Positions 1 through 62,728 are shown, numbered from the stretch's first letter. The stretch: 64,000 bases of DNA from Asterias rubens (GCF_902459465.1 NC_047062.1:18600001-18664000); one strand, 5' to 3'. The notes: generated by a model not told the origin, from the sequence alone. Translations and numbers: made by a program.

Positions 1-99
1 ATACGTGCTGATATTTATTGTATGTGACACACTTAAAACAATAAATGATTATTTAATTTAAGTCAATTCATCTTAGTAAGTGTAAATCGTTGCTTACTG

Positions 100-470
100 C
101 TCTGGTCCATATTCGGTGTTGAAAACCACTCCGAGTTGTTCAACGATGTGATGACTTAAATCTGTAATTAAAAGAACAGCGGAAAAATAGTAAATACATG
201 TTATGTCAGAGATATTCAACTATAAACGAAGTCGAGGTAAATTATCAAGAACCAGGCCGCGGCGGGTTTAAACCACTAGTTGAAAACCGATTCAACACAC
301 TTTGATTCCCATTCATCAATACCTTTTCGGACAAAAACATCAACACTTTTTGGTCAAAAATAAAATAAATGCAAACATTATAATTATTGTTCAATGATTT
401 ATTTCAACACAACACCTCTCCAGCTATGAAATGGTATTGCTCTCCGCCGCCCTCGGGTAAACAACTCCTT
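100..470. repeat. Partial foldback-type interspersed repeat
   Basis: Contains the right half of the CGAG-N-CGAAG-N-CGAG centre (ACGAAGTCGAG, 226-236) seen in foldback elements elsewhere in the window. Boundaries approximate. Confidence 0.35.
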
Positions 471-982
471 ATAAGGGAATGCTGTGCGCGTCGCGCGTAT
501 CGCGTGATGTGGCACAACTGTTTCAGCCGTTGCTCTTGACCAATAGGAATGAAGAAACTGTCTTAAGCACAGGAGTGCGTTTCGGTTGTTGGTCGTTGGT
601 TCTGCTGTTCAGACTGAACGATAACCGAGTTGTGAGCTCGGTTACCGTTTTGGTTATGACGTCAGAAACAGTTTTTGGTTGGGGTCGCCAAAACGCACTC
701 TAGGTGGTGCAAGCTCGCGTGTCACGCCCATGTTCAAACACTTTTTACTGGTTATAAACAAAGGTGTATACACACCCACGTGACGCGCTCTCCATCAATA
801 GGAATAGCGAAACTGTTTGAGGTATTTATGAATATATGTTTAATGTGGATAGATATTGATCATTTTAAAAGTTCAAACTTTTTGTAAAAAAACCAACATT
901 TTAAATTGATGAGTGAACTAAACATTGTTCAGGCTCTTCAGGGTCCAAATGGTTGCCATAAACACTGATTCCTTTCAGACTG

Positions 983-3900
983 CTATCTGCAAACTACGGC
1001 CCCCAAAACAAACAAAACACAGTAACCTATAATCTACATACAGCAAACAACATCTTGAGTTGTACACTTTGTTTTTTTTGACATTGTGTACTTACATTTC
1101 CGATGTACAGTAGTTTGTTAGGACTTCCCTTCACATCAGTAACTTTATTAAGCGTGGAGTCGCTCAACATTCTAGTTTTGATCTGTTGCGGCGTTTCGCT
1201 GTTGGCTTTACTTACATAAAGGGCTGCGGCTCCTGAATATAAATAAAAAATGACGTCATGTGTTACGTTTGTAAAGTAATTTCTTGTTGCCTTAAAGAGC
1301 AATTAAGTTCAAATTTTCTAGCTTTTGTCACGGTGCACTCTCGCTCTGATGGATCGACATCACGTACCGTACATTTGGAAGTGTAATTTGATTGGTTTCC
1401 CTATTCTAGCTGCTTTATGTGCACCAGCCAACCTTGATAATTATCGTTAATAATTTGTTTGTGCCTTTGCAATATTATACCACCGGGAAATATCAGAATA
1501 TCTTTTCAAATGCAATAATATTAGTAGTATTTTATAAACTTTTAGGTCAAAAACGGGCCTCCAATGTTTTGTCCAGTAAAAAAACTCTGAAATGTTAGGC
1601 ATTTTAATGCAAACAGACGAGCACTTGACCTGATACGTGGGGGCAAGCCATGGATGTTCCGGACATGGTAGTAGTGCCAGTGTTGGATGCGTAGCTGGCG
1701 CTTAAGACGTCTACGCCGGGAGCAAAGAGGTCAAGACAAGTACCGTAGTTGGAGAAGTAAGCTCTTGCGTCCTTGTTATCTGTTGCCCCAACGGTGATTG
1801 TCTGTCGAATCAGCAAAAGTAAATCATTGTAACCGATTTCAAGACAAAATAAAAGTAAACGTGGATTGCAGTAGGGCATAAGGAAACCGCGGCTTTATAC
1901 CCTCATCTTTCCCCAAACCCTTAAAACTCATTTTAAACTGACATTTAACAAAAGTGAGGCGTAGAGGGCGTAGTACCCTGTTTGATTCTTCCACCCGTTT
2001 GAGCAGTACGTATTTTGCTTTGAATGCTTCTACATTTGAAAAACCATTTCTTTGTTCCACAAGTCGTTGTGGACTGTGGCTATTGGCAACCAAACACATG
2101 CAGCAACCAATATTAAATAGTAACAATGTCCAGGTCTTTGGGAACTGTACAGACAAACTTACGTTTGCGGATCTTGATGGCGAGCTATTGCATGAGTCGG
2201 TGTCATCATTACCAGCAGCAACGGACACTACATAGCCGGCATTCCAAAGAGCAGTCACAGCATTGTCAATAGATTTAGAGGCTGGGAACCGGAGTGACAC
2301 TGAGACCACTCCCTTTGGACTCTGATTGTGGGCCTTGACACTATCACAACCTGTAATGGGGGGGGGGGGGGCACCAAAACGCGGTTTATGTAAGCGGTCA
2401 AAAAGCTGTATTTGGTTTGCTGTATAGTAACACCATGTGTTAATTATACTTGCTGCGTAGATTATAGTATTTTGAGAACTTGTCTTGCTTTTATATGCTA
2501 GTACCACGGGGTAGATTGGTATCGGAATTCTGGACGATGGCTTGAGCAAACCAGTGGAAACGTTGATACCAATAAGTATTAAAATAAACTAGATAAATAT
2601 TAGGACCATTTTTCCAAAATTGATAAGTCTCCCGAATTCTGAAAATGACTCCGCGTAGAAAAAATATGACAAGTCATTCTAAAAAGAACATAATCTACCC
2701 AGCCCCAGCAAGTAGATGACATGGTGTCACCGCAAACCAATCATACATTGATACCTAATCATGCAATGCCTATGACATCCTATCATGGTAAAGTAGCTCT
2801 TGATTTTTGACATTGGTGCAAAACTGTTATCGAATCAAGGCTATTTAATTTTTCACTCAAGTTCAAAAGGTTCACATTTGAACACGATAGGCAGTCGTTG
2901 TTTGAAATAAAAACAAAGAATCGACTAGAGAACGTACCAGCCACAAAGACACTGACGGGACAGCCTGGATCGCACACCTTGACGCTCTGGATGGTTGATT
3001 GGCGGGCTAATCCATAGGTCGCACCGCCAACAGTTCCAGAGCAATGAGTGCCGTGGCCGTTGTTGTCTGTGGCGCCGTACAGCATATGGGCGCGGGTCCC
3101 GAACTCGCTGTGGTTGATGTTAACGCCGGTGTCCATCACATACACATGCACACCAGTGCCCTGAACTGCAAAACAAAATTTTAAGACTCTATGTGTTATT
3201 TTATAAGTACTTTTGATTGTATAAGTAAAGTACAATATTATTCATACAATTGATTGTACCTTTTTACTGACTGTTCTACAGTGCAGTCTCCTCATCATGA
3301 CATCTTTCCATTGAAATAAACATTAAGTTTTGTAGGTTTAATCTTAATAGAATTTGTGGACAAAGAAAATAGTCTTTCTGAAGAAATAACGCGTCTTGCA
3401 TTGATCGTGCCTTTGGAGAAACATTTCCTCGTAAAAACGCAACTTTGCATTAATGGCCATCCGTAATAACCATTCAAGAGGGACCTAAAGGTAATTCACA
3501 AACAAACACAAAGAGGACATTCAATGAATTTAAATGTACTGCACAGTAGTGCTCCCCCCCGTTATACCATTGCAATACGTGGCACATTAGTGTACAACAT
3601 GTTATTCAATAAAGGTGCCCAATTTTATAGAACTGCATAAGCGCAAAAATTAGCTTAACACACCAACATGAGGATACCAGCCAAAATACCACGTCGTATG
3701 TACAATTTGTGACCTGCATCGTACACATTTTGCCAAGCAGCTCCATAATAATTTGGGCCCGGAAACCATAACTTTATCCCGTTAGTACAACAAGATGCGT
3801 GCTGCCACCAACCATTCTCTTGGCCCTCTCTCGGCCGTTGTGATTCACTTTATAATTCTAATTATCGATAGCATGTGATTTACTTACAGTCATCGGGATA

Positions 3901-5582
3901 TTTGAAAGTGTTGTCTAATGGTAAATTACGCTGATCAACTCGATCTAAACCCCACGTAGCTCCAGTCTGTTTGCCTTGAGTATGACCAAGACTGTCCTGT
4001 TCAACAAACTCAACGGCATCCAGGGAACGGACCTGCCAGTTGGAGGGGACAGTACGTCATTTATTTATTCATTCATTCGCAGTCATATTAATGACCTTTA
4101 TAAATAAATAATACAAATAATAATAACTCTTATATAGCGCATTTCACAATAACCGTATCAATGCGCTTTACATTTATAGTGCCCTGGTCATAGGGCCAAT
4201 CGAAAGATCCCTTTTAATGTTTCTCAGCTCCCTTGGGAGTATATAACGAATATGCTCTTTCATTAATACATTATAGTGTTCTTTGTGATAACTATCCTGT
4301 ATACTGCCTTAACTGAAGTGAAACAAGATGCACATTTATGAACATCTTTAACTAATACTTATTTGAATAAGTTAGCCCATGCGTTTACCACAATCATTAT
4401 GAAATGTTAAAATTACAGTTGCAACATAATGAGGCCCTTTTCCTACACGTATTTTAAGACACAGTTATAATCAAGATCAACTAAATAATTTTGCGTAAGT
4501 GCAAAAGAACGGGTTCAACTGGTGATTGCGAAAGACTAAAGCAGAGCTTAAGCTCTCAGTATGATCAGCTGATTCGCAAATTTTAGGGTCACACAAGGCA
4601 ATTTTTCCTTGCAACTTGAAGGCAATTTAGTGCATGCTACATGACCACTTTGGTAAAGCATTGGTAATTATCCAAACATTGCCTTGAGATCTCCAAGATA
4701 AATATTTGATCATTCATATGTGGATGCCTTTCTTTTGGAGATTGCCTGGAACTGGTTACCTGTAAATTTCCTCGTGTGACATGGCCCTATTAACTTACAT
4801 AGTTGACTAGATGTGGTGGGATTCTGAGAGTGAGGGCGCGCATGACCAGGCGGATCTTATTTATTTTACCAATCGGGGTTCGCATCTGAGTGAAGTAACC
4901 CTCCAACTCATCCGCCACTTGATCCACATCGGCTACATCCTGCAATGAACAATTTAGTACCATGTCAGAGAAATTATGGGAGGGAAAAAACAAACATGTG
5001 GTTTTTATGGTGATTTACCTTGTAGACTGGATCAATCAACTAGATCAGTCAAAACTAATATAATGTTATTGTGAATCAACTGTAGTTGTACAGCAATGAA
5101 TTTGTTTCAAATGAGGCATCTCAGACGATTGTCAGTTAACCTGTTTCTGCTGAGCTATTTTGAAAGGAAAAGCAGAAAAAACATATTTGTATAAAAACAA
5201 AACAATGATTCAAAAAGTATACCATAGCTGCAGTGCACAGCCGAATTTGAGTCTGCGCTTAACCATGCATGTGCCGCCGTGCAACTCGCTCTTGATTTCA
5301 ATTTTGAAAAACATCAATTATTGTGAAACTTATAATAGTTGTGCGACTAAAGTGCTTTAAGTGGTTTCCCTTTTCTTTTTTACACTTTAGATTGTACCAC
5401 CATTACTTAACTACAGCAGGCAAAACTTGTAAGGCAGGTCGCAGGAGTCTTAAACTAAACGATAGACTTACTTTCAGTTGAACAATGTATTTGTTTGGTA
5501 AACCGCGTTCTTTGGCCATGTGAAGTGGAGCCAAGCCACCATGAGCGAAGGCTACACACATGCACAACAGAAACAGCTTCAT
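983..5582 (-). CDS. Secreted subtilisin/proteinase K-family (S8A, PCSK9/aqualysin-like) serine protease, gene A, complete
   Basis: Exons with GT/AG borders and compatible phases: 5472-5582 ([15 protein letters not shown] signal peptide), 4799-4939 (I9-type prodomain), 3888-4032 (VEFVEQD...[10 protein letters not shown]), 2938-3165 (catalytic D in DTG, H in HGTHCSG), 2163-2350 (oxyanion N in AAGND), 1630-1801 (S in GTSMACP), 1096-1232. The terminal exon 983-1033 is tentative. Confidence 0.92.
3614..3760. mobile_element. Degenerate MITE (GGGCCCAATTT-type ends) in intron 3 of gene A
   Basis: Imperfect TIR ggtgcccaatttt...atttgggccc; orthologous insertion in copy B at 6694-6808. Confidence 0.5.
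4116..4235 (-). mobile_element. Retroposon (L2/SINE-like) 3' tail
   Basis: Minus strand ends ...gtgaaatgcgctatataagagttattattatt. The ccaagggagctgaga segment recurs at about 19245 and 54686. Confidence 0.4.
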
Positions 5583-5660
5583 CGCAGTTATGACAGTACC
5601 ACCGGGTGAAAACAAGCACAGTCAAGTGGTTTCTCATTTTAAGTAGGCCTATATATGCGT

Positions 5661-5668
5661 TTTTTATA
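5661..5668 (-). promoter_or_regulatory. Probable TATA box of protease gene A
   Basis: TATAAAAA on the minus strand about 80 bp upstream of the ATG at 5582. Confidence 0.5.
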
Positions 5669-6422
5669 GCCTTTGCTTTGCCGCATCGCATGTTCAAAAT
5701 GCAGCTGTTCTTTTCTGTGACAATCGACTGGTATCAAAGACTTTATCTAACTAGACGCAGTGTCCTCACATTAACCTGTCATTGTCAGCACGACGTTATC
5801 AGAAACAAAACACTTTAATTTCTTAAGTTTTACAGCAACTTTAAAAAGTGATGACGAACGTTTTATTGGCTAGCGTCGGTAAACATTTTCGTTTGATGGA
5901 ATGAAGATTTGCAAAGTTGCAAGGAAAAGTTGTGACAAGGACCAACAAAGTTTCATTTGCGAAGTGGTCAGCTGCTCATACTGAAGCTCAAGCTCTGCTT
6001 GAATTTGTCCAACTCACCAATGAACCCGTTCATCTTGATGATAAAAGTGCGCTTTAGGGCACGGTTAAAATTGCCCCTTTTCCAAGTAGTTACAAATACT
6101 TGTTTGAAAAGGGCTGATCATAATGTTAACATCACTGCAACAGTTAACATCAGTATTAGTGGATGAATGGACTGACTGATTGAAATTAGTAGCCAAATAA
6201 TATGTTCATAATGTGCCCTTGGTTTATAAGGCAGTGTACAGGATCGTAGTAATCACAAAGAACACTAATTGTATTTAATGAAAGAGCAACAATTGATTAT
6301 AAAGGTAATTCCATCTCAACCCTTCAGAGAGAAAAAAACACACGTCACAATCATGTAAATAATTATGACTGCGAATGAATAATGAATAAATAAAATGACC
6401 TATACTGCCCTCCATCTGGCAG

Positions 6423-9400
6423 GTCCGCTCCCTGGATGCTGTTGAGGTCGTTGAACAGGACAGTCTTGGTCGTATTCAAGGCCAACAGAATGGAGCTACG
6501 TGGGGTTTAGATCGAGTTGATCAGCGTAATTTACCATTAGACAACACTTTCAAATATCCCGATGACTGTAAGTGAAACTCATGCTATTGATAAATTCGAG
6601 TTACAGTAAATCACAACGGCCGGGAGAGGGCCAAGAGAATGGTTGGTGGCAGCACGCATCTTGTTGTACTCACGGGGTAAAGTTATGGTTTCTGGGCCCA
6701 ATTTCATAGCTTCTTGGCAAAATGTGTAGGTATGTTGGCTGGTAACCTCATGTTGGTGGTCTTAGTAGCAATCTGTTGTGAGTATGCATTTCTATGAAAT
6801 TGTGCACCTGTTTGGTGACATGTTGTACACCAATGTGCCAGGTATAATGGAACATGGTGGAAAGTCCCATTATGTTACATCGTCTTGTTACATCGAGTGT
6901 CATCTTTGTGTTCGTTTGTGAATTACCTTTAAGTCCCCTTTGAATGGTAACATTACGGATGCCCATAATGTAAAGTTGTGTTTCTCTTTTACCTGGAAAT
7001 GTTTCTCCAAACGCACGAGCAATGCAAGACACGTGATTTCTGCAGAAAGACTATTTTCCATGTCCAAACAAAATTAAGTTGAATTTAAAATGTATACAAC
7101 TCGATATTGGTTTCATTTTAAGGTAATTACAATGATAATACTCAGTGTAAAATAACACATACAATAGCGTCTTATTAATTTTTATGATAACATTGACGTT
7201 ATGCAGTTCAGGGCAATGGTGTGAATGTGTATGTGATGGACTCTGGTGTTAACATCAACCATGGTGAGTTCGGGACTCGCGCCAAGCTACTGTATGGCGT
7301 CGCCGACGACCATGGCCACGGCACTCATTGCTCTGGAACTGTGGGCGGTGCGACCTATGGAATAGCCCGCCAATCCACCATTCAGAGCGTCAAGGTGTGC
7401 GACAGATACGGTGGCTGTCCTGTCAGTGTCTTTGTGACTGGTACGTTTTCAGTCGATTTTTTTTTTCAAGCAACGACTAATCGTATTAAGGGACCATATG
7501 AGGGACAGCTCGAAATGTAAAGAGTGGTGTTTTTCACTCTTTTAAATTTAGAGAGTATATTCGACAGCACCGAAATGAAAGTCAACAAACAATACAATCA
7601 TAGAATTTGAGGCATTGCATAGTGAGGTATCGACGTGTTTTTTGTTTATGGTGACACCATGTACATTATGATTACGGGGACACGTTCTTAAAAGAACGTG
7701 TCTTGCTCATATCGTATAGACCTTTCTTTTGTTGATAAAAAAAACCGCCTTGGTTGGCATGGTCGGCCGAATGTTAGTAAAACACTCAATCGTAAAAACA
7801 GATGAATCAACAAAATTCAAAATTTTCTCCAAATTTTCAATTAAATAAAATACCTCTCATGATAAGTTGCTTTGTTTTAAACAAAATCATTTTATAAAAA
7901 TAGCGATCTATTCTTGATTTGCACTTATGGCTTTCTATAGTTTTCCAATCTGGGTTGGCAAAAACTCGCGCTGTGACGTTGCAAAAGAAACGTCTATAGT
8001 ACTACGTGGAGTACATTCTGCGGAATTCGGTAGACTTCTCAGTTCTAAAAAGAACTATGAAATCCTGATTATAATTAACTACCTGTGTGGAATCCAATAA
8101 TAAGACAAGTTCTCAAAAGAACATCTACACAGCAAATGGATGGCGGGTATTGCAAACCAAATACATCTATTTTACTGCTTCCATATAAAAAAACGCGTTT
8201 AGGTTTTGATTTTCCCCACAGGTTGTGATAGTGTCAAGGCCCACAATCAGAGTCCAAAGGGAGTGGTCTCAGTGTCACTCCGGTTCCCAGCCTCTAAATC
8301 TATTGACAATGCTGTGACTGCTCTTTGGAATGCCGGCTATGTAGTGTCCGTTGCTGCTGGTAATGATGACACCGACGCTTGCACGTACTCGCCATCAAGA
8401 GCCGCAAGCGTCAGTTGGTCTAAATATTTTGTATTTTGTGCATTATAATAATAGTATTATTATTAAGTATTATAATAGTATTATATATAATTTTGCAGCA
8501 TGAATAGCAAAATACATACTGCTCAAACGGGTGGAACAGTCATGAACCAGGGTATGCCCTCTGTCTATGCCCCACCTTTTATAATGCCAGTTGCACATGA
8601 GTTTAAAGGGGGATGGGGGAGCCATGCAGTTTATGTGTGTCCTACTGCAGTTCAATCCACGCCTGCTTTTATTTTGTCTTGAAAACTGTTACCATATTTT
8701 ACTTTTGCTGATTCGACAGACAATAACCACCGGGGCAACTGATAAGTACGACGCACGAGCTTACTTCTCCAACTACGGTACTTGTGTTGACATCTTTGCT
8801 CCCGGTGTTGAAATCTTAAGCGCCGGCTACGCATCCGACACTGGCACTACTATCATGTCCGGAACATCCATGGCTTGCCCTCACGTATCAGGTCAAGTAC
8901 TCGTCTGTTCGCATTGAATGCCTTAAAGACACTGGACACTATTGGTAATTGCCAAAGACCAGTCTTCTCACTTGGTGTGTCTCAACATATGAATAAAATA
9001 ACAAACCTGTGAAAATTTGAGCTCAATTGGCCGTCGAAGTTGCGAGATAATAATGAAAGAAAAAACCACCCTTGTCACCCGAAGTTGTGTGTGTTTAGAT
9101 GGTTGATTTCGAGACTTCAAATTCTAAATCTGAGGAAAAATTACTTCTTTCTCAAAAACAATGTCACTTCAGAGGGAGCCGTTTCTCACAATGTTTTATA
9201 CCATCAACCTCTCCCCATTTAACTCGTCACCAAGTAATGTTTTATGTTAAAAATTATGTTGAGTAGTTACCAATAGTGTCCACTGCCTTTAAATCTCATG
9301 GGGGGAGGGTTACTGGACAAAACATGTGACGCCTTTTTTTGACCCCAAAGTTTGTGATATAAAACTAATATTATTGCATTGGAATGGTGCAATTCTGATA

Positions 9401-10010
9401 TTTTACCAGCGGAATATTGCAAAGGCACTATAAATGGGCCGGCAAAAAAAATATACGTGACCATCAATTGTTGAAGGTCGTTTTCTAGGTTGGCTGTTGC
9501 GCTTAAAATAGCTCAACCCAACGAAATGGTTTTAACTAGAATAAGGAAATCGGATAAGTTTGGTTACCGTTCCAAATGCGACTGATATCCTGTTCGTATA
9601 ATCAGAAAATTACTACGTGACATTTGCTGCTTAAGATGATGTCCATCCCTCAGAGAGATAGTGCACCGTGATAAAGGCTTGAAAATTGGGGTTTAAATGC
9701 TCTTTAAGGCGACAAGAAGTTACTTTACAATCGTAACACATGACGTCATTTTTTTGTTTAGGAGCTGCAGCCCTTTATGTAAGTAAAGACAACACCGAAA
9801 CGCCGCAACAGATCAAAACTAGAATGTTGAGCGACGCAACGCCTTATAAGGTTACTGATTCGAAGGGAAGCCCTAACAAGCTTCTTTACATCGGAAATGT
9901 AAGTACATAACGTCCTTCAATCGAATCCTTGCAAGTGTATAGACTTGAAATCAAGACGTTATTTGCTGTAGATTATAGGTTACCGTGTTTTGTTTGTTTT
10001 CGGGCTGTAG
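6423..10010 (+). CDS. S8A protease copy B: inverted paralogue of gene A exons 3-8, lacking exons 1-2 within the window
   Basis: Exons 6423-6567, 7207-7440, 8222-8409, 8720-8891, 9762-9898 (tentative last exon 9972-10010). All are open, with intact splice sites, catalytic triad ([15 protein letters not shown]) and AAGND. Exon sizes equal A's except one in-frame +6 bp. No plus-strand signal/prodomain exon lies between 5583 and 6422. Confidence 0.75.
6694..6808. mobile_element. Orthologous, internally deleted copy of the same MITE in copy B
   Basis: gggcccaatttcatag...ctatgaaattgtgcacc at the same intron position as in A, so the insertion predates the A/B duplication. Confidence 0.5.
8923..9292 (+). 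mobile_element. Kolobok/T2-type MITE, main family
   Basis: TTAA duplication at both ends; TIR AG(A/G)CA(C/G)TGGACACTATTGGTAA; inserted in intron 6 of copy B only. Confidence 0.8.
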
Positions 10011-11930
10011 CTTTCCAGATAGCAATCTGACATGAGCCGGTGTCTATGGCAACCATGTATACCCTAAATAATTAGTTCACTAAATAATTTGAAATTAATT
10101 TTGTAAAAATTATCGCTGAACATTTACTGAAATGTTGTTCATTGATACCATGACAGTTGGATCTCTTAAAAATTTAAATTTCTATCTCCGCATAAAACAT
10201 TGTCGATTCGAGATTTGTGTATCATGTGAAGAGATCACAAATACATATACACTCTGTATTCTGAAAGGGGAGGTTAGTTGAACCTCTCTGGCATAATGAT
10301 TGTATATACACTTTCGAGATATTTATTTTCCCACCGTTCTTGTATTTTTATCACAGATTTAAGTCAACACAGGAGTGGTTTATAACACAGTATGGACCAG
10401 AGCATGCAGTTATAGCAACGATTCACGCTTACTATAAGATGCATTAATTTTACTGAAATTTAATCCAATCCATCGTTGTAAGTGTGTCACAATACATCTC
10501 AGCACGCTGTACACTTGTAAAGAGCCATTTAAAAAAAATGTACTAGTAAAACGTTTTACTGATCCTAGATATAGGGCAAACTGTTCTGAAACGAAATTAT
10601 GCAAATTCTATCCGGAAGCCTATACTTGTTGAAAAAACATGATCAGGAATATCTGTAAAACTTCTTCATCTGAAGTGTTCCAATTGATTAAAATAGGTAT
10701 AAAAGACGAAATGTTTCGCCTTGGATTATTTCATTAAGTTGTTTACAAATCACAGTAAAACAAAGTTTACATCAGAACCAACGGTTACCCACATCGCGTA
10801 TTATGCGCATGTGTTAATATGGATACCAGTTTTCCCCTTTGTGACCCCGACAGAGGTAAAGTTATTAATTTAATTTAGGTAATGCTTGAGAAAACACAAG
10901 TTATTCATGGTCTCAGTCAAATGGTCTTTCCTCATTTCTTAATGATTGTTAAATTGAAATAGGGTAATTAGTCGTGGAGACAAATACCATGAGCAATAGG
11001 TGAATCAATAATCTGGGTTTTATAAACTTTAATTTCTTCTCGGAAAACGGTTACAACATTGATACAAATTTTATACTATAAAAAAACCCATTTAGCATTA
11101 AATTTGTTTTGTTGTATGTAACATTTAACATTTCAGCACTATCTTGATTGTGTATGGGAAACATGACAAAAACAACTGCTGTCATAATCATGCTTATCTT
11201 TATACTACCTTTAGTTCAAAATTGACAAAACAATTGTTCAAAATAAACGCAGCTGGCGCTTTTGCTATTCTATAATTCTTCAGGACTAGAGCAGAAAAAA
11301 ATAATGCATAATTTTGTCAAACTAAATAAAAAATTAGTTTTGAAATACCAGGAGAAAAAAAAGTTCAACACTCGGCCGAAGATAGCATCAAGTTTTGAAC
11401 CAAACCTCTTTTTCCTTTGTTTGCCTTATGAGGCCAAAATACAGAGCCGTACTAGCCTTACAAAACTATGCAGAACAAGTTGTATGGTGCCCTTTTTTGC
11501 TTGAAATTAAAACAATAAATTTTGCAATTCAGTCTTCAAATAAAAAGTACAAAAATCCCGTTCGGACGTAGTACTGCCCTCTATGAACTTGACCTCTCTG
11601 TAGCTAACTCGTGGGGCTCACTATATGTCAAACATCCCGATTTGTCAAAACACCCTTTAGCATGCACCCTGCTTAATATTCTCTCCATAGCATAAGGTGC
11701 ACTGTTTTGTGCAAACAGTGCATAACGTGAACTTGTATCCTCTGCTCAATCTTATATTATTAGGAGTCTCAAGGCCCGTCAGTTAATATTCTCCCTAAAA
11801 TAAAAACGACCCTACACCACTACTGTAGTTTATAAAAATAATAATCATTGTCGGTGCCACCAAAAATATTATAATGATGGGCGCAGCTACGGAAGCGTAT
11901 TGCAACATAGATATTTTCTTTTTCTCTCTC

Positions 11931-12302
11931 TTATCGTTTACGTACTCGATAACTTATCACGTACGTACACGATAACTTATCGTGTACGTACACGATAACT
12001 AATCATGTACGTACACGATAACTTATCATGTACGTATACGATAAATCTAAATTATCGTGTACGTACACAATAAATTCAAAAATATATCATGTAATTACAC
12101 GATAATTCATCATGTACGTACACGATAACTTATTATGTACGTACACGATAAATTCAAACTTATTGTGTACGAACACAATACATTCAAAAACACATCATGT
12201 ACTTACACAATAAGTCCAAAAACTTATCGTGTGCATACACGATAACTTAGCGTGTACGTACGCGATAAGTCCAAACTTGTCGTGTACGTACACGACAAGT
12301 TT
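11931..12302. repeat. Tandem array of about 14 palindromic units (core TATCGTGTACGTACACGATA)
   Basis: Units of about 21-34 bp separated by short A/C-rich linkers; perfect palindromes at 11977-11998 and 12273-12302. Confidence 0.9.
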
Positions 12303-14345: not shown

Positions 14346-19598
<5,253 letters not shown>

Positions 19599-20485
19599 CG
19601 TAGAGTAACTTGCTGATTTACTTTGCGAGAAGAAAACAACACGCTAATATAGAACCTAGAGCAAAAACGATTTTAAGGAATTTTAAAGAGTTTTGTTGTT
19701 CTCTCTCCTGAATACGAGCAGAGTATGCTGTTCTAATTGTCGATACCAAACTGGCTCTTTTTAAAGGCGACATCCCATCAAAAGAATATTAGGTTTGTAC
19801 CCGCAAGTTCATTCTGATTTTAAGAAAGGATTGTGTTCACACAGCTACTGTTCCTATTCAATTATAAGCATGAGAAATTATTCAGGTAAATTTTGTTCAA
19901 ATAAAAAAGTCTTTCCCGAAGGTTAACCATGATTATTAGCCTTCGAGACAGACTCTGCCAGGATCGAAACGTCGCGACGGGTCACTAACTAATTTTCGCA
20001 TTAATTTGTCCTTATACCTTGGTAAAGAGGTTTGCAACAGCTAATTCCATTTTCCAAAATAATTTCAACAACAGTTTACTTGTATGATGAATATCAAAAG
20101 CTAAAAGAAGGTGACTTACCCAGGTGATGAGATACCCCAAAAGTGGTTACAAAATATCATGCCAGTCTCTTTTATATCTGTTATCTATTTTGTTGTGAAA
20201 CTCTTGTCTTTGCAATATGTCATCAATTAATATTATGTTATCAACAAATTACAGGAACAATGCTAGTACAAATACTGATTATGACATGTATTTTGGCTTG
20301 TGTTATGAATTAAAGCGTCCATGTACTTCTGGTAATACCACGTCAACTACTGTAGACGAACAGTTTGTAAATACATGTATGCTTTTGTTGTTCTGGAGTC
20401 GAGACCGGGGTAATGTGTGAGATTTGAGGAAATAGCCGGCCTGACGGACGTTGTATGGCACTTGAAATCAAGTCGGTGACACTTC

Positions 20486-21780
20486 GCCTCTTGGTCCACT
20501 GTCTGGACTCGGACTCGGCCTGACATGTCCTCTTGGTCCACTGTTTGGACTCGGACTCGGTCTGGCATGTCCTCTTGGTCCACTCTCTGGACTCGAACTC
20601 GGTCTGGCATGCATTCTTGGTCCACTGTCTGGACTCGGACTCGGCCTGACATGTCAGGGTCCTCTTGGTCCACTGTCTGGACTCGGACTCGGCCTTGACT
20701 GGCCTCTTGGTCCACTGTCTGGTCTCGGACTCGGCCTGACATGTCCTCTTGGTCCACTGTCTGGACTCAGACTCGGCCTGGCATGTCCTCTTGGTCCACT
20801 GTTTGGACTAGGACTCGGTCTGGCATGTCCTCTTTGTCCACTGTCTGGACTCGGACTCGGTCTGACATGTCAGGGTCCTCTTGGTCCACTGTCTGGACTC
20901 GGACTCGGCCTTGACTGGCCTCTTGGTCCACTGTCTGGTCTCGGACTCGGCCTGACATGTCCTCTTGGTCCACTGTCTGGACTCGGACTCGGTCTGGCAT
21001 GTCCTCTTGGTCCACTGTTTGGACTCGGACTCGGCCTGGCATGTCCTCTTCACCACTGTCTGGACTCGGACTCGGCCTTGAATGGCCTCTTGGTCCACTG
21101 TCTGGTCTCGGACTCGGCCTTGACTATCCTCTTGGTCTACTGCTGTCTGGACTCGGACTCGGCCTGACATGTCCTCTTCACCACTGTCTGGACACGGACT
21201 CAGCCTTGACTGTCCTCTTGGTCCACTGTCTGGACTCGGACTCGGTCTGGCATGTCCTCTTGGCATGCCCACTGTCTGGACTCGGACTCGGCCTGACCTG
21301 CCCCCTTGGTCCACTGTCTGGACTCGGACTCGGCCTGGCATGTCCTCTTGGTCCACTGTCTGGACTCGGCCTGACCTGTCCCCTTGGTCCACTGTCTGGA
21401 CTCGGTCTCGGCCTGGCATTTCATCTTGGTCCACTGTCTGGACTCGGCCTGACCTGTCCCCTTGGTCCACTGTCTGGACTCGGACTCGGCCTGGCATGTC
21501 CTCTTGGTCCACTGTCTGGACTCGGCCTGACCTGTCCCCTTGGTCCACTGTCTGGACTCGGACACGGCCTGGCATGTCCTCTTGGTCCACTGTCTGGACT
21601 CGGCCTGACCTGTCCCCTTGGTCCACTGTCTGGACTCGGACTCGGCCTGGCATTTCCTCTTCTGCCATACTGTCTGGACTCGGACTCGGGCTCGGCCTGA
21701 CCTGTCCTCGTGATCCATAGAGTGTGGACTCGGACTCAGCCTGGCCTGTCATCGTGGTCCTTGCAGTCTGGACTCGGCTT
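20486..21780. repeat. GC-rich 42-bp minisatellite with higher-order structure
   Basis: Unit cctcttggtccactgtctggactcggactcggcctgacatgt; 36- and 48-bp variants; 216-bp and 78-bp higher-order periods. Confidence 0.95.
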
Positions 21781-31105: not shown

Positions 31106-31490
31106 TTAAAGACACTGAACACTATTGGTAATTGTCAAAGACTAGTCTTCACAGTTGTTGTATCTCAACATATGCATAAAATAACTAACCTGTGCAAAAT
31201 TGAGCTCAATCGGTCGTCAAAGTTGCGAGATAATAATGAAAGAAAAAACACAATTGTCACACGAAGTTGTGTGCTTTCAGATGCTTGATTTCAAGACCAC
31301 AAATTCTAAACCTAAGGTCTCGAAATCAAATTCGTTGAAAATTCCTTCTTTCTCGAAAACTACGTCACTTCAGAGGGAGCCGTTTCTCACAATGTTTTAT
31401 GCTACCAACCTTTCCCCATTACTCGTTACCAAGTAAGGTTTTATGATAATAATTATTTGGAGTAATTACCAATAGTATCCACTGCTTTTA
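31106..31490 (+). mobile_element. Kolobok/T2-type MITE, main family
   Basis: Same TIR and body with internal hairpin ttgatttc(g/a)agacc...ggtctcgaaatcaa. Confidence 0.8.
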
Positions 31491-38520: not shown

Positions 38521-38905
38521 TTAAAGGCAGTGGACACTATTGGTAATTGTCAAAGACTAGCCTTCACAGTTGGTGAATCTCAACATACACATAAAATGGC
38601 AAACCTGTGAAAATTTGAGCTCAATCGGTCATCGAACTTGTGAGATAATAATGGAAGAAAACAAACCTTGTCTCACGAAGTTGTGTGTGTTTAGATGGTT
38701 GATTTCGAGACCTCAAATTCTAAACTTGAGGTCTCGAAATCAAATTCGTGGAAAATTACTTCCATCTCGAAAACTATGTCACCTCAGAGGGAGCCGTTTC
38801 TCACAATGTTTTATACCATCAACCTCTCCCCATTGCTCGTCACGAAGTAAGATTTTATGCCCATAATTATTTTGAGTAATTACCAATAGTGTCCACTGCC
38901 TTTAA
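38521..38905 (+). mobile_element. Kolobok/T2-type MITE, main family
   Basis: TTAA-AGGCAGTGGACACTATTGGTAATT ... AATTACCAATAGTGTCCACTGCCT-TTAA, perfect TIR. Confidence 0.85.
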
Positions 38906-39297: not shown

Positions 39298-39684
39298 TTA
39301 AAGGCCGAGGACACTATTGGTAATTGTCAAAGACTAGCCTCCACAGTTAGTGTATCTCAACATATGCATAAAATAATGAACCTGTGAAAATTTGAGCTCA
39401 ATCGGTCATCGAACTTGCGAGATATGAATGAAAGAAAAAAACAACCTTGTCACACGAAGGTGTGTGCGTTTAGATGGTTGATTTCGAGACCTCAAGTTCT
39501 AAATCTGAGGTCTCGAAATCAAATTCAGGGAAAGTTACTTCTTTCTCAAAAACTATGGAACTTCAGAGGGTGCCGTTTCTCACAATGTTTTATACCATCA
39601 ACCTCTCCCCATTACTCGTCACCAAGAAAGGTTTTATAATAATAATTATTTTGAGTAATTACCAATAGTGTCCACTGCCTTTAA
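39298..39684 (+). mobile_element. Kolobok/T2-type MITE, main family
   Basis: TTAA flanks; same body as 38521-38905. Confidence 0.85.
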
Positions 39685-62335: not shown

Positions 62336-62728
62336 TTAAAGACACTGAACACTATTGGTAATTGTTAAAGACCAGTCTTCTCACTTGGTGTATCTCAACA
62401 AATGCACAAAAATAGCAAACCCGTGAAAATTTGAACTCAATTGGTCGTCAAAGTTGCGAGATAATGGAAGAAAAAACACCCTTGTCACTCCAAGTTGTGT
62501 ACTTTCAGATGCTTGATTTTGGGACCTCAAAATCTAATTCCGAGGTCTCAAAATCAAATTCAAATATTTTACTGGAAAATTACTTCTTTCTCGAAAACTA
62601 CGTTACTTCAGTGGGAGCCGTTTCTCACAATGTTTTATATTATCAACAGCTCTCCATTGCTTGTTACCAAGTAAGTTTTTTGCTAACAATTATTTTGAGT
62701 AATTACCAATAGTGTCCAGTGCCTATAA
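62336..62728 (+). mobile_element. Kolobok/T2-type MITE, main family
   Basis: ttaaagacactgaacactattggtaatt...aattaccaatagtgtccagtgcct. Confidence 0.8.

What the first reader, a model, noticed from the sequence alone, without database searches (positions are those of the whole stretch)
983..10010. One promoter plus signal/prodomain head between two opposed, intact protease catalytic cassettes: candidate inversion switch or trans-splicing system
Seen: cassette A (exons 3-8, minus, 983-4032) and cassette B (exons 3-8, plus, 6423-10010) are inverted copies. Their homology ends about 65-130 bp into the intron upstream of exon 3. The ~2.2-kb segment between them holds the TATA box and exons 1-2, on the minus strand only. 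B has no head in the window, yet 876 bp of its exons 3-7 are open with intact splice sites and catalytic triad. Its only exonic indel is in-frame (+6 bp), while its introns carry many indels and a private MITE. Exon 2 ends in phase 0 and exon 3B starts in phase 0. Established: S8A proteases need the signal peptide and I9 prodomain to fold and be secreted; opposite-strand exon joining by trans-splicing is known at Drosophila mod(mdg4); inverted repeats mediate recurrent inversions. Inference: B may be expressed (i) when recombination between the arms flips the central head, a shufflon-like protease switch, (ii) by trans-splicing to exon 2 of A or C, or (iii) from its own exons 1-2 left of position 1, with gene A nested in its intron. 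Otherwise it is a recent pseudogene.
Basis: partly seen in the sequence, partly recalled or inferred. Interest (0 to 1): 0.82.

Follow-up and report, generated by a model that had tools for sequence, protein, structure and literature searches.

The report
Beheaded protease gene copy in starfish
In the common starfish, two mirror-image protease genes share one start region because a small flip and a roughly 2-kb deletion left one copy without its first two exons; this is an ordinary gene-family rearrangement, with no sign of a switch.

Summary
The window is Asterias rubens chromosome LR699092.1. A (minus) and B (plus) are inverted copies of a proteinase-K/aqualysin-like S8A subtilase. B has exons 3-8 open with all splice sites, but no exons 1-2 in the window or in the 4.4 kb to its left.

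The sister species A. amurensis explains it. There A and B sit head to head, each with its own promoter, exon 1 and exon 2, 1.3 kb apart. RNA reads show both are expressed. The single A. rubens head is the orthologue of the amurensis B head (95% identity, against 79% to the A head), yet it is inverted and joined to the A body. The switch point lies inside the near-identical exon 2. The A-type head, most of the spacer and the start of B intron 2 are missing, with a blunt junction at 5911|5912.

Best reading: recombination between the inverted exon-2 copies flipped the centre, then about 2 kb was deleted. B is a recently beheaded gene. NCBI gives it a 12-codon cryptic first exon with no signal peptide.

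B shows no decay yet, so the loss is young, possibly polymorphic. No A. rubens RNA could be examined. A switch or trans-splicing is unsupported, and nesting is refuted.

The parts
156..5582 (-). Gene A coding range (NCBI XP_033638176.1, 375 aa). Exons: 5582-5472, 4939-4799, 4032-3888, 3165-2938, 2350-2163, 1801-1630, 1232-1096, 161-156. It is a chimera: a B-type head on an A-type body.
   Evidence: Threading the annotated protein through the DNA; locus table; head and body orthology.
4792..5911 (-). The surviving head: exon 2, intron 1, exon 1, the promoter with a TATA-like run near 5651-5658, and 97 bp of unique spacer. It is the orthologue of the A. amurensis B head, in inverted orientation.
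   Evidence: 93.9-94.7% identity over 1.1 kb to the amurensis B head on the opposite strand. The tree groups it with the amurensis B head at 95.4% identity, against 78.9% to the A head, with bootstrap 100. Intron 1 is 532 nt here, 526 nt in amurensis B and 378 nt in amurensis A.
4799..4939 (-). Exon 2, which encodes the propeptide. It is nearly identical in all five copies of both species and holds the switch point from A-type sequence (3' part and intron 2) to B-type sequence (intron 1 onwards).
   Evidence: Exon 2 alignment shows 0-7 differences in 141 nt; breakpoint alignment.
5911..5912 (.). Deletion junction. The inverted spacer (amurensis 15872 in my reverse-complement coordinates) abuts B intron 2 (amurensis 17550). 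The junction is blunt, with little or no microhomology.
   Evidence: Nucleotide alignments; blastn boundaries.
5590..5625 (+). Cryptic first coding exon of NCBI's B model (12 codons, GT donor at 5626). It lies antisense to A's 5' UTR and is annotated as spliced to exon 3B.
   Evidence: The N-terminus of P0152 maps here exactly. The annotated B range is L001 10001-13328, which equals window 5590-8917.
5912..6422 (+). Remnant of B intron 2 (its distal part). It is homologous to A intron 2 (4242-4617) at 67%.
6423..10362 (+). B body. Exons 3-8: 6423-6567, 7207-7440, 8222-8409, 8720-8891, 9762-9898 and about 10357-10362. All are open, all introns are GT-AG, and the catalytic triad is present.
   Evidence: Pfam Peptidase_S8 on exons 4 and 6.
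8222..8376 (+). Part of exon 5 that is 100% identical to A (2350-2196). It lies within a 159-nt run that has no fixed A/B difference: an old gene-conversion tract between the arms.
   Evidence: Alignment; the longest run without a fixed difference is 159 nt, chance about 7e-4.
8923..9292 (.). 370-bp MITE in B intron 6, with 26-nt terminal inverted repeats that begin TTAA. It is a high-copy element.
   Evidence: very high read and contig depth.
14571..19598 (-). Gene C, a complete paralogue about 50% identical to A, with its own head (exon 1 at 19598-19488, exon 2 about 18764-18624).

Best explanation
The window is Asterias rubens chromosome LR699092.1, near 18.60 Mb. It carries a cluster of secreted proteinase-K/aqualysin-like subtilases (S8A) in the order Z(-) A(-) B(+) C(-). 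A and B are an old head-to-head inverted duplicate.

In the sister species A. amurensis both genes are complete. Each has its own promoter, exon 1 (signal peptide) and exon 2 (propeptide). The two start codons are 1.3 kb apart, and both genes are transcribed.

In the A. rubens reference the centre of this palindrome was rearranged:
- The only surviving head is the orthologue of the amurensis B head, but it is inverted and spliced to the A body. The switch point lies inside the near-identical exon 2.
- The A-type head, about 720 bp of unique spacer and the first part of B intron 2 are gone, with a blunt junction at 5911|5912. The loss is about 1.8-2.2 kb.

The simplest history, which is inferred, has two steps. 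Homologous recombination between the two inverted exon-2 copies flipped the 2.45-kb centre and swapped the heads. A deletion then removed the head that was serving B.

B is therefore a recently beheaded gene. Its exons 3-8 are intact because it was a complete, selected gene until recently, not because a switch or trans-splicing serves it. If B is transcribed, it is from the cryptic 12-codon first exon in NCBI's model. That product has no signal peptide and lacks about three quarters of the propeptide. This family uses the propeptide as a folding chaperone, so the product is probably non-functional. This last step is inference from established subtilase biology.
For: Identity of the locus:
- The window starts at L001 position 4412 of GCA_902459465.3.
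- A is P0298 and B is P0152, both named aqualysin-1-like [Asterias rubens].
- Both match Pfam Peptidase_S8. The best solved relatives are aqualysin-1 (4dzt) and proteinase K, with the mature domain starting near residue 106.

State in the sister species:
- The amurensis B orthologue P0299 falls in the same 90% cluster as P0152 and is 377 aa with its own exons 1-2.
- It sits head to head with the A orthologue P0002.
- That assembly was built from PacBio HiFi reads (PMC10625585).

The head swap:
- Window 4792-5931 matches the amurensis B head on the opposite strand at 94%. The flanks and both gene bodies are collinear between the species.
- In the head tree, the A. rubens head groups with amurensis B at 95.4% identity and bootstrap 100. 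The amurensis A head has no A. rubens partner.
- The B-type match runs 97 bp past the end of arm homology into unique spacer. That fits an inversion better than homology-bounded gene conversion.
- The switch inside exon 2 and the blunt junction were read at nucleotide level.
- The missing spacer and A-type intron 1 are found nowhere in the window.

Age and expression:
- A versus B dS is 0.18-0.23. Orthologue dS is 0.035-0.064, so the duplication long predates the species split.
- Runs X8 and X9 cover B exons 3-7 with zero depth in the introns.
- All 13 listed variants on those exons equal the amurensis B letters, so B is expressed in amurensis.
Against: - The A. rubens B branch shows no decay. 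It carries 10-12 substitutions where 28.6 are expected under neutrality (P about 4e-4), and 0 exonic indels where 3.5 are expected (P = 0.03). Either the deletion is very young or haplotype-specific, or B is still under selection.
- The N:S ratio is 7:3 on the rubens B branch and 7:9 on the amurensis B branch. This hints at relaxed constraint but is not significant (Fisher P = 0.25).
- No A. rubens RNA was examined. The cryptic first exon rests on NCBI's model alone.
- The junction at 5911|5912 was not bridged by any listed contig of the independent run X4.
- The inversion is inferred from two single-haplotype assemblies with no outgroup.
Confidence: 0.62

Rival explanations
1. B is still a working gene in A. 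rubens despite having no head of its own. Three routes are possible. It could use the cryptic first exon at 5590-5625 and make an intracellular enzyme without a propeptide. It could receive exons 1-2 from A, Z or C by trans-splicing. Or other A. rubens haplotypes could carry the centre in the other orientation, or an undeleted second head, so that selection still acts on B.
For: The rubens B branch has far fewer substitutions than neutral expectation and no indels or stops. All splice sites, the catalytic triad and the tiny last exon are intact. NCBI annotates B as protein-coding. The arms keep identical blocks that recombination could use: 84 bp in exon 3 and about 155 bp in exon 5.
Against: The cryptic-exon product has no signal peptide and lacks residues 1-84 of a precursor about 105 residues long. 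This family needs its propeptide to fold (established for subtilisin, aqualysin and proteinase K; my own knowledge). No chimeric junction was seen. Spliced-leader or inter-gene trans-splicing is not known in echinoderms (my own knowledge). The lack of decay is explained equally well by a young deletion.
Confidence: 0.13
2. The headless state is an error or a one-off in the A. rubens reference assembly (PacBio/10X/Hi-C, 2019). Real A. rubens chromosomes would then carry two heads, as A. amurensis does.
For: A palindromic locus is hard to assemble. The junction at 5911|5912 is not bridged by the listed X4 contigs, which stop at 5886 and restart at 5911-5913. B shows no decay.
Against: The arms are 10-30% diverged, so they should not collapse in assembly. 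The junction is clean, and A keeps a perfectly in-frame hybrid exon 2. X4 contigs match the reference on both sides at about 99%. An environmental metagenome scaffold matches the B body at 99.4%. NCBI built its models on this structure.
Confidence: 0.1
3. The outcome is the same but there was no inversion. A's original head was overwritten by a copy of B's head, by long gene conversion or template switching. B's own head was then deleted.
For: Gene conversion between these arms clearly occurs: exon 5 has a 159-nt run without fixed differences, and exon 2 is near-identical in all copies. The end product is almost the same as for inversion plus deletion.
Against: The B-type sequence attached to A runs 97 bp beyond the end of arm homology (amurensis 15969 to 15872) into unique spacer. 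A homology-bounded conversion tract should not copy that. This route also needs two events.
Confidence: 0.15

Closest known systems
Inversions by homologous recombination between inverted paralogous repeats (human F8 int22h, FLNA-EMD, IDS-IDS2)
   Same: Two inverted homologous copies flank a short unique centre. The crossover lies inside the most identical block, here the 141-bp exon 2, and it flips the centre.
   Different: Here both partners were whole genes, so the flip only swapped promoters and signal-peptide exons. The event is inferred from a comparison of two species, not seen as a polymorphism. A second event, a deletion, made one copy headless.
Arm-to-arm gene conversion in palindromes (human Y chromosome P1-P8)
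   Same: Inverted gene copies exchange sequence. Exon 5 and exon 2 have tracts with no fixed A/B differences.
   Different: The arms are only 70-95% alike overall, so conversion is patchy and does not homogenise them.
Bacterial invertible-DNA switches (fimS, Hin, R64 shufflon)
   Same: In form, one promoter-bearing segment lies between inverted repeats and could serve either of two coding cassettes.
   Different: No site-specific recombinase or short crossover sites were identified. There is no evidence that both orientations coexist. The arms are diverged gene bodies. The resemblance is one of shape only.
Drosophila mod(mdg4) opposite-strand trans-splicing
   Same: 3' exons lie on the strand opposite the common 5' exons, and the splice phases are compatible (exon 2 and exon 3B are both phase 0).
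   Different: No chimeric transcript was observed. The phase match is simply inherited, because B once had its own exon 2.
Proteinase K / aqualysin-I subfamily of subtilases (MEROPS S8A)
   Same: The mature domain aligns along its whole length with aqualysin-1 and proteinase K (E about 1e-70). The D/H/S triad is present. A and amurensis B have a signal peptide and a propeptide.
   Different: A. rubens B lacks the signal peptide and most of the propeptide.

Membership tests
Subtilase S8A, proteinase K/aqualysin type | Peptidase_S8 catalytic domain | tested here: met
   PF00082 matches A (E 5e-34), B (3e-24) and amurensis B (4e-31), and B exons 4 and 6 on their own.
Subtilase S8A, proteinase K/aqualysin type | Asp-His-Ser triad in the order D, H, S | tested here: met
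   The motifs [13 protein letters not shown] and SGTSMACPH are present in the B translation and align with aqualysin-1 4dzt.
Subtilase S8A, proteinase K/aqualysin type | N-terminal signal peptide plus an I9-type propeptide that acts as a folding chaperone | tested here: not met
   This row refers to A. rubens B. No head exon lies on its strand, and the annotated N-terminus is 12 unrelated residues. A and amurensis B do meet the feature: residues 16-105 align with pro-proteinase K 8rse.
Invertible-DNA switch (shufflon / fimS type) | Both orientations of the segment coexist in one individual or population | not testable with these tools
   The single read-laying run gave contigs of one DNA run that do not bridge the junctions. 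Only a difference between two species was seen.
Invertible-DNA switch (shufflon / fimS type) | Dedicated recombinase and short specific crossover sites | not tested
   No search for a recombinase was made. The inverted repeats found are the diverged gene bodies themselves.
mod(mdg4)-type trans-splicing | Mature mRNA that joins exons from opposite strands | tested here: inconclusive
   The only listed opposite-strand joint lies inside the MITE (8950/9195). Another 335 joints were not shown, and the RNA runs proved to be A. amurensis, which has two heads.
Truncated duplicate / unitary pseudogene | Loss of promoter and 5' coding exons | tested here: met
   Relative to the complete orthologue, exons 1-2 and the promoter are absent, with a defined junction at 5911|5912.
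Truncated duplicate / unitary pseudogene | Disabling lesions or relaxed constraint in the remaining exons | tested here: not met
   There are no stops, frameshifts or lost splice sites. The rubens B branch has 7 N and 3 S changes, about 10-12 in all against 28.6 expected if neutral.

The most novel reading that the evidence does not exclude
The centre of the palindrome may still flip in A. rubens, or haplotypes with and without the deletion may coexist. The single head, or the second one, would then serve B in part of the population. That would explain why headless B shows no decay: 0 indels against 3.5 expected, and about 11 substitutions against 29. Recombination in the identical exon-3 or exon-5 blocks could also create A/B hybrid proteases.
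Probability: 0.07. Interest if true: 0.65.

Novelty: new member of a known kind. Interest (0 to 1): 0.3.

Why it matters
This resolves what looked like a possible eukaryotic cassette switch into an ordinary history that can be dated. Two head-to-head paralogues swapped their promoter and signal-peptide exons by recombination within a conserved exon, and one copy then lost its head. It is a clean, base-resolved example of how palindromic gene pairs produce chimeric genes and fresh pseudogenes. It also shows that intact open exons alone do not show that a gene copy is in use. For annotators, it flags XP_033638211.1 as a likely truncated product. The mild remaining puzzle, that B has not decayed at all, makes this locus a cheap test for a structural polymorphism in A. 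rubens.

Tried and rejected
- Searched for a plus-strand head with tblastn, using the A and C exon 1-2 peptides, across the 64 kb and the 4.4-kb left flank. None was found, so the nesting option was rejected.
- Used RNA evidence for A. rubens B. The one read-laying run used runs offered under the same species label. All 13 listed variants on B, and the one on A exon 3, equal A. amurensis letters. The reads therefore say nothing about A. rubens B.
- Looked for splice joints and loose ends at 6423. They could not be seen because the MITE at 8923-9292 filled the tables.
- At first read the 37% exon-2 variant (4829/4831) as a sign of a second head in A. rubens. Rejected: it is simply the amurensis B exon 2.
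- Took small RNA runs X1-X3 as possible B expression. They hold under 5% of the words of exons 3-4, so their share of the longer stretch is probably the MITE.
The annotated proteins place it at 161-156 and about 10357-10362.
- Tried to confirm the junction in other samples, through exact ORF look-ups next to it and a protein search. Nothing is on record.
- Pairwise dN/dS between A and B (0.42-0.56) cannot separate the branches. The four-sequence parsimony counts have too few changes to be significant.
- Literature and earlier scan notes gave nothing on these genes.
Full report
**The observation.** A repeat scan and blastn confirm that 1-4617 (minus) and 5914-10506 (plus) are inverted copies. 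Identity is 86-98% in exons and 65-80% in introns.

Gene A has eight GT-AG exons and encodes a 375-aa precursor. B has exons 3-7 at 6423-6567, 7207-7440, 8222-8409, 8720-8891 and 9762-9898. They are open, with intact splice sites and the Asp, His and Ser motifs. One in-frame +6 bp indel is the only exonic length difference.

tblastn with the head peptides of A and C finds heads only on the minus strand, at 5582-5472 and 4939-4799 for A and at 19598-19488 and about 18764-18624 for C.

Weak arm homology continues to 4617 and 5914. The last coding exon is a 6-nt exon at 161-156 in A and about 10357-10362 in B, both intact, not at 983/10010.

The intron-6 element at 8923-9292 is a 370-bp MITE with 26-nt terminal inverted repeats and several more copies in the window.

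**What the genes are.** B exons 4 and 6 match Pfam Peptidase_S8. A search of protein representatives with B exon 4 returned a 375-aa protein. A homologue search named it aqualysin-1-like, from Asterias.

The window is Asterias rubens GCA_902459465.3, LR699092.1. Window position 1 equals position 4412 of locus L001. A is XP_033638176.1 and B is XP_033638211.1. The closest solved structures are aqualysin-1 (4dzt) and proteinase K, and the mature enzyme starts near residue 106. Exon 3 therefore begins 21 residues before the mature N-terminus. Exons 1-2 encode the signal peptide and most of the propeptide.

The cluster reads Z(-) A(-) B(+) C(-). Z lies just left of the window, with its own minus-strand head.

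**How B is annotated.** NCBI's B protein (266 aa) starts with 12 residues unrelated to the family and then continues with exon 3. Those 12 codons map to 5590-5625 on the plus strand and are followed by GT. They lie 8-43 bp from A's start codon, antisense to A's 5' UTR. The model ends by reading from exon 6 into intron 6. I could not check the RNA support for this model.

**The sister species resolves the puzzle.** In A. amurensis (HiFi assembly GCA_032118995.1; PMC10625585) the orthologous locus has the A orthologue (P0002, 375 aa) and the B orthologue (P0299, 377 aa) head to head. Each has its own exons 1 and 2, and the start codons are 1.3 kb apart. P0299 carries B's diagnostic features, including the two extra residues in exon 4. 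B was therefore a complete gene in the common ancestor.

A versus B dS is 0.18-0.23, while orthologue dS is 0.035-0.064. The duplication is thus several times older than the species split. This explains why exons are far better conserved than introns between A and B.

**The centre is rearranged in A. rubens.** Flanks and both gene bodies are collinear between the species at 92-96% identity. Window 4792-5931, however, matches the amurensis B head on the opposite strand at 94%. This stretch holds exon 2, intron 1, exon 1 and 330 bp upstream. The amurensis A head matches it at only 79-80%.

A tree of upstream region, exon 1 and intron 1 pairs the A. rubens head with the amurensis B head (95.4% identity, bootstrap 100). 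The amurensis A head has no partner. Intron 1 length agrees: 532 nt here, 526 nt in amurensis B and 378 nt in amurensis A.

At nucleotide level, the 3' part of exon 2 and intron 2 are A-type and everything upstream is B-type. The switch therefore lies inside exon 2, which differs by 0-7 of 141 nt among five copies.

On the other side, the B-type sequence runs 97 bp past the end of arm homology into unique spacer. It then meets B intron 2 (amurensis 17550 in my reverse-complement coordinates) at a blunt junction, 5911|5912.

The A-type intron 1 and the rest of the spacer are found nowhere in the window. About 375 bp of the missing intron-2 part is a repeat that may be an amurensis-specific insertion. 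The loss is therefore 1.8-2.2 kb.

**History (inferred).** Recombination between the two inverted exon-2 copies would flip the 2.45-kb centre and swap the heads, leaving both genes whole. One contiguous deletion then removes the rest of the spacer, the A-type promoter, exon 1, intron 1, the second exon 2 and the start of B intron 2.

Conversion of A's head by B's head, followed by deletion of B's head, gives nearly the same product. It does not easily explain the 97 bp of unique spacer carried along. Which species carries the derived orientation cannot be told without an outgroup.

Exchange between the arms is independently evident. A 159-nt run in exon 5 has no fixed A/B difference, with a chance of about 7e-4.

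**RNA evidence and its limit.** Two raw-read RNA runs (X8 and X9) cover B exons 3-7, and A exons 1-3, at depths of roughly 10-40. Intron depth is zero, and depth is zero across 5685-6284.

All 13 listed fixed differences on B, and the one on A exon 3, equal the A. amurensis letters. A variant of exon 2 seen in 37% of reads is the amurensis B exon 2. These runs therefore come from A. amurensis or something very close to it. They show that the complete B orthologue is expressed and spliced there, at roughly half the level of A.

They say nothing about headless B in A. rubens. The joint and loose-end tables were filled by the MITE, so no splice junctions could be read.

**Is B decaying?** Between the species, introns differ by 5.0-6.5% and carry 8-10 indel events per kb. 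B exons differ by 3.2% with no indel.

Using A as the outgroup, the A. rubens B branch carries 7 nonsynonymous and 3 synonymous changes. The amurensis B branch carries 7 and 9 (Fisher P = 0.25).

If B had been neutral since the split, 28.6 substitutions and 3.5 indels would be expected. The chance of 12 or fewer substitutions is 4e-4, and the chance of no indel is 0.03. The beheading is therefore young relative to the split and could be polymorphic or specific to the reference haplotype. Otherwise B is still under selection, or the assembly is wrong here.

Some reference-specific B changes (6447, 6472) are absent from an independent A. rubens-like DNA run. An environmental scaffold matches the B body at 99.4%. 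No independent record bridges the junction.

**Verdict.** The pattern is real, but it is the product of an ordinary rearrangement in a palindromic paralogue pair. The head was flipped at least once in evolution, and one head was then deleted.

B is most likely a freshly beheaded gene whose product, if made, lacks the signal peptide and the folding propeptide. A programmed inversion switch and trans-splicing have no support, and nesting is refuted.

The remaining uncertainty is whether the deletion is fixed, and whether B retains any use. A. rubens long reads and RNA-seq would settle both.

Noticed in passing
window 20444-21673: GC-rich minisatellite with units of 42 and 36 nt. Long ORFs are open in several frames on both strands, including a 14-residue repeat in a 314-aa minus-strand ORF. 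I did not establish whether it is coding.
   Followed up: partly
window 11900-12294: Array of units about 23 nt long containing ACGTACACGATAAC-like motifs, with internal inverted symmetry. It lies between genes B and C.
   Followed up: no
window 14799-15177: Two 99%-identical direct copies about 180 nt long, each followed by a poly(A) run of about 25 nt. They lie inside an intron of gene C and look like a recent local duplication of a SINE-like element.
   Followed up: no
window 31113-31484, 38528-38898, 39305-39677, 62343-62721, 49877-49898: Further copies of the 370-bp MITE found in B intron 6. RNA and DNA depth on the element is thousands of times that of its flanks.
   Followed up: partly
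L001 791-1559 (left of the window): Paralogue Z has its own minus-strand exons 1-2 and is the orthologue of A. amurensis P0151. NCBI's A. rubens model for it has only 308 residues, so it may be another incomplete or oddly annotated copy.
   Followed up: partly
window 4799-4939, with the paralogous exon 2 copies in L001 and L003: Exon 2 is nearly identical at nucleotide level in A, B and Z of both species (0-7 differences in 141 nt), while the flanking introns differ by about 20%. This points to concerted evolution, or to constraint beyond the protein level.
   Followed up: partly
P0300 (ENA ERZ23498373, 566-bp contig): An 80-aa genomic ORF whose first half is B-type exon 4 and whose second half is Z/P0151-type. 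It is a mosaic paralogue in an environmental sample.
   Followed up: partly
L004 (ENA metagenome scaffold SOLA22-1, 1229 bp): Environmental DNA that is 99.4% identical to window 6450-7671. Starfish DNA is therefore present in a marine metagenome.
   Followed up: yes
L003 reverse-complement 17009-17383; window 16495-16852 and 49957-50318: A repeat about 375 bp long sits in A. amurensis B intron 2. It has 85% copies in gene C's intron and elsewhere in the window.
   Followed up: no
runs X7-X10: RNA runs offered by 'same species label' carry A. amurensis alleles at every checked site, not those of the A. rubens window. Reads chosen this way can come from the sister species.
   Followed up: yes
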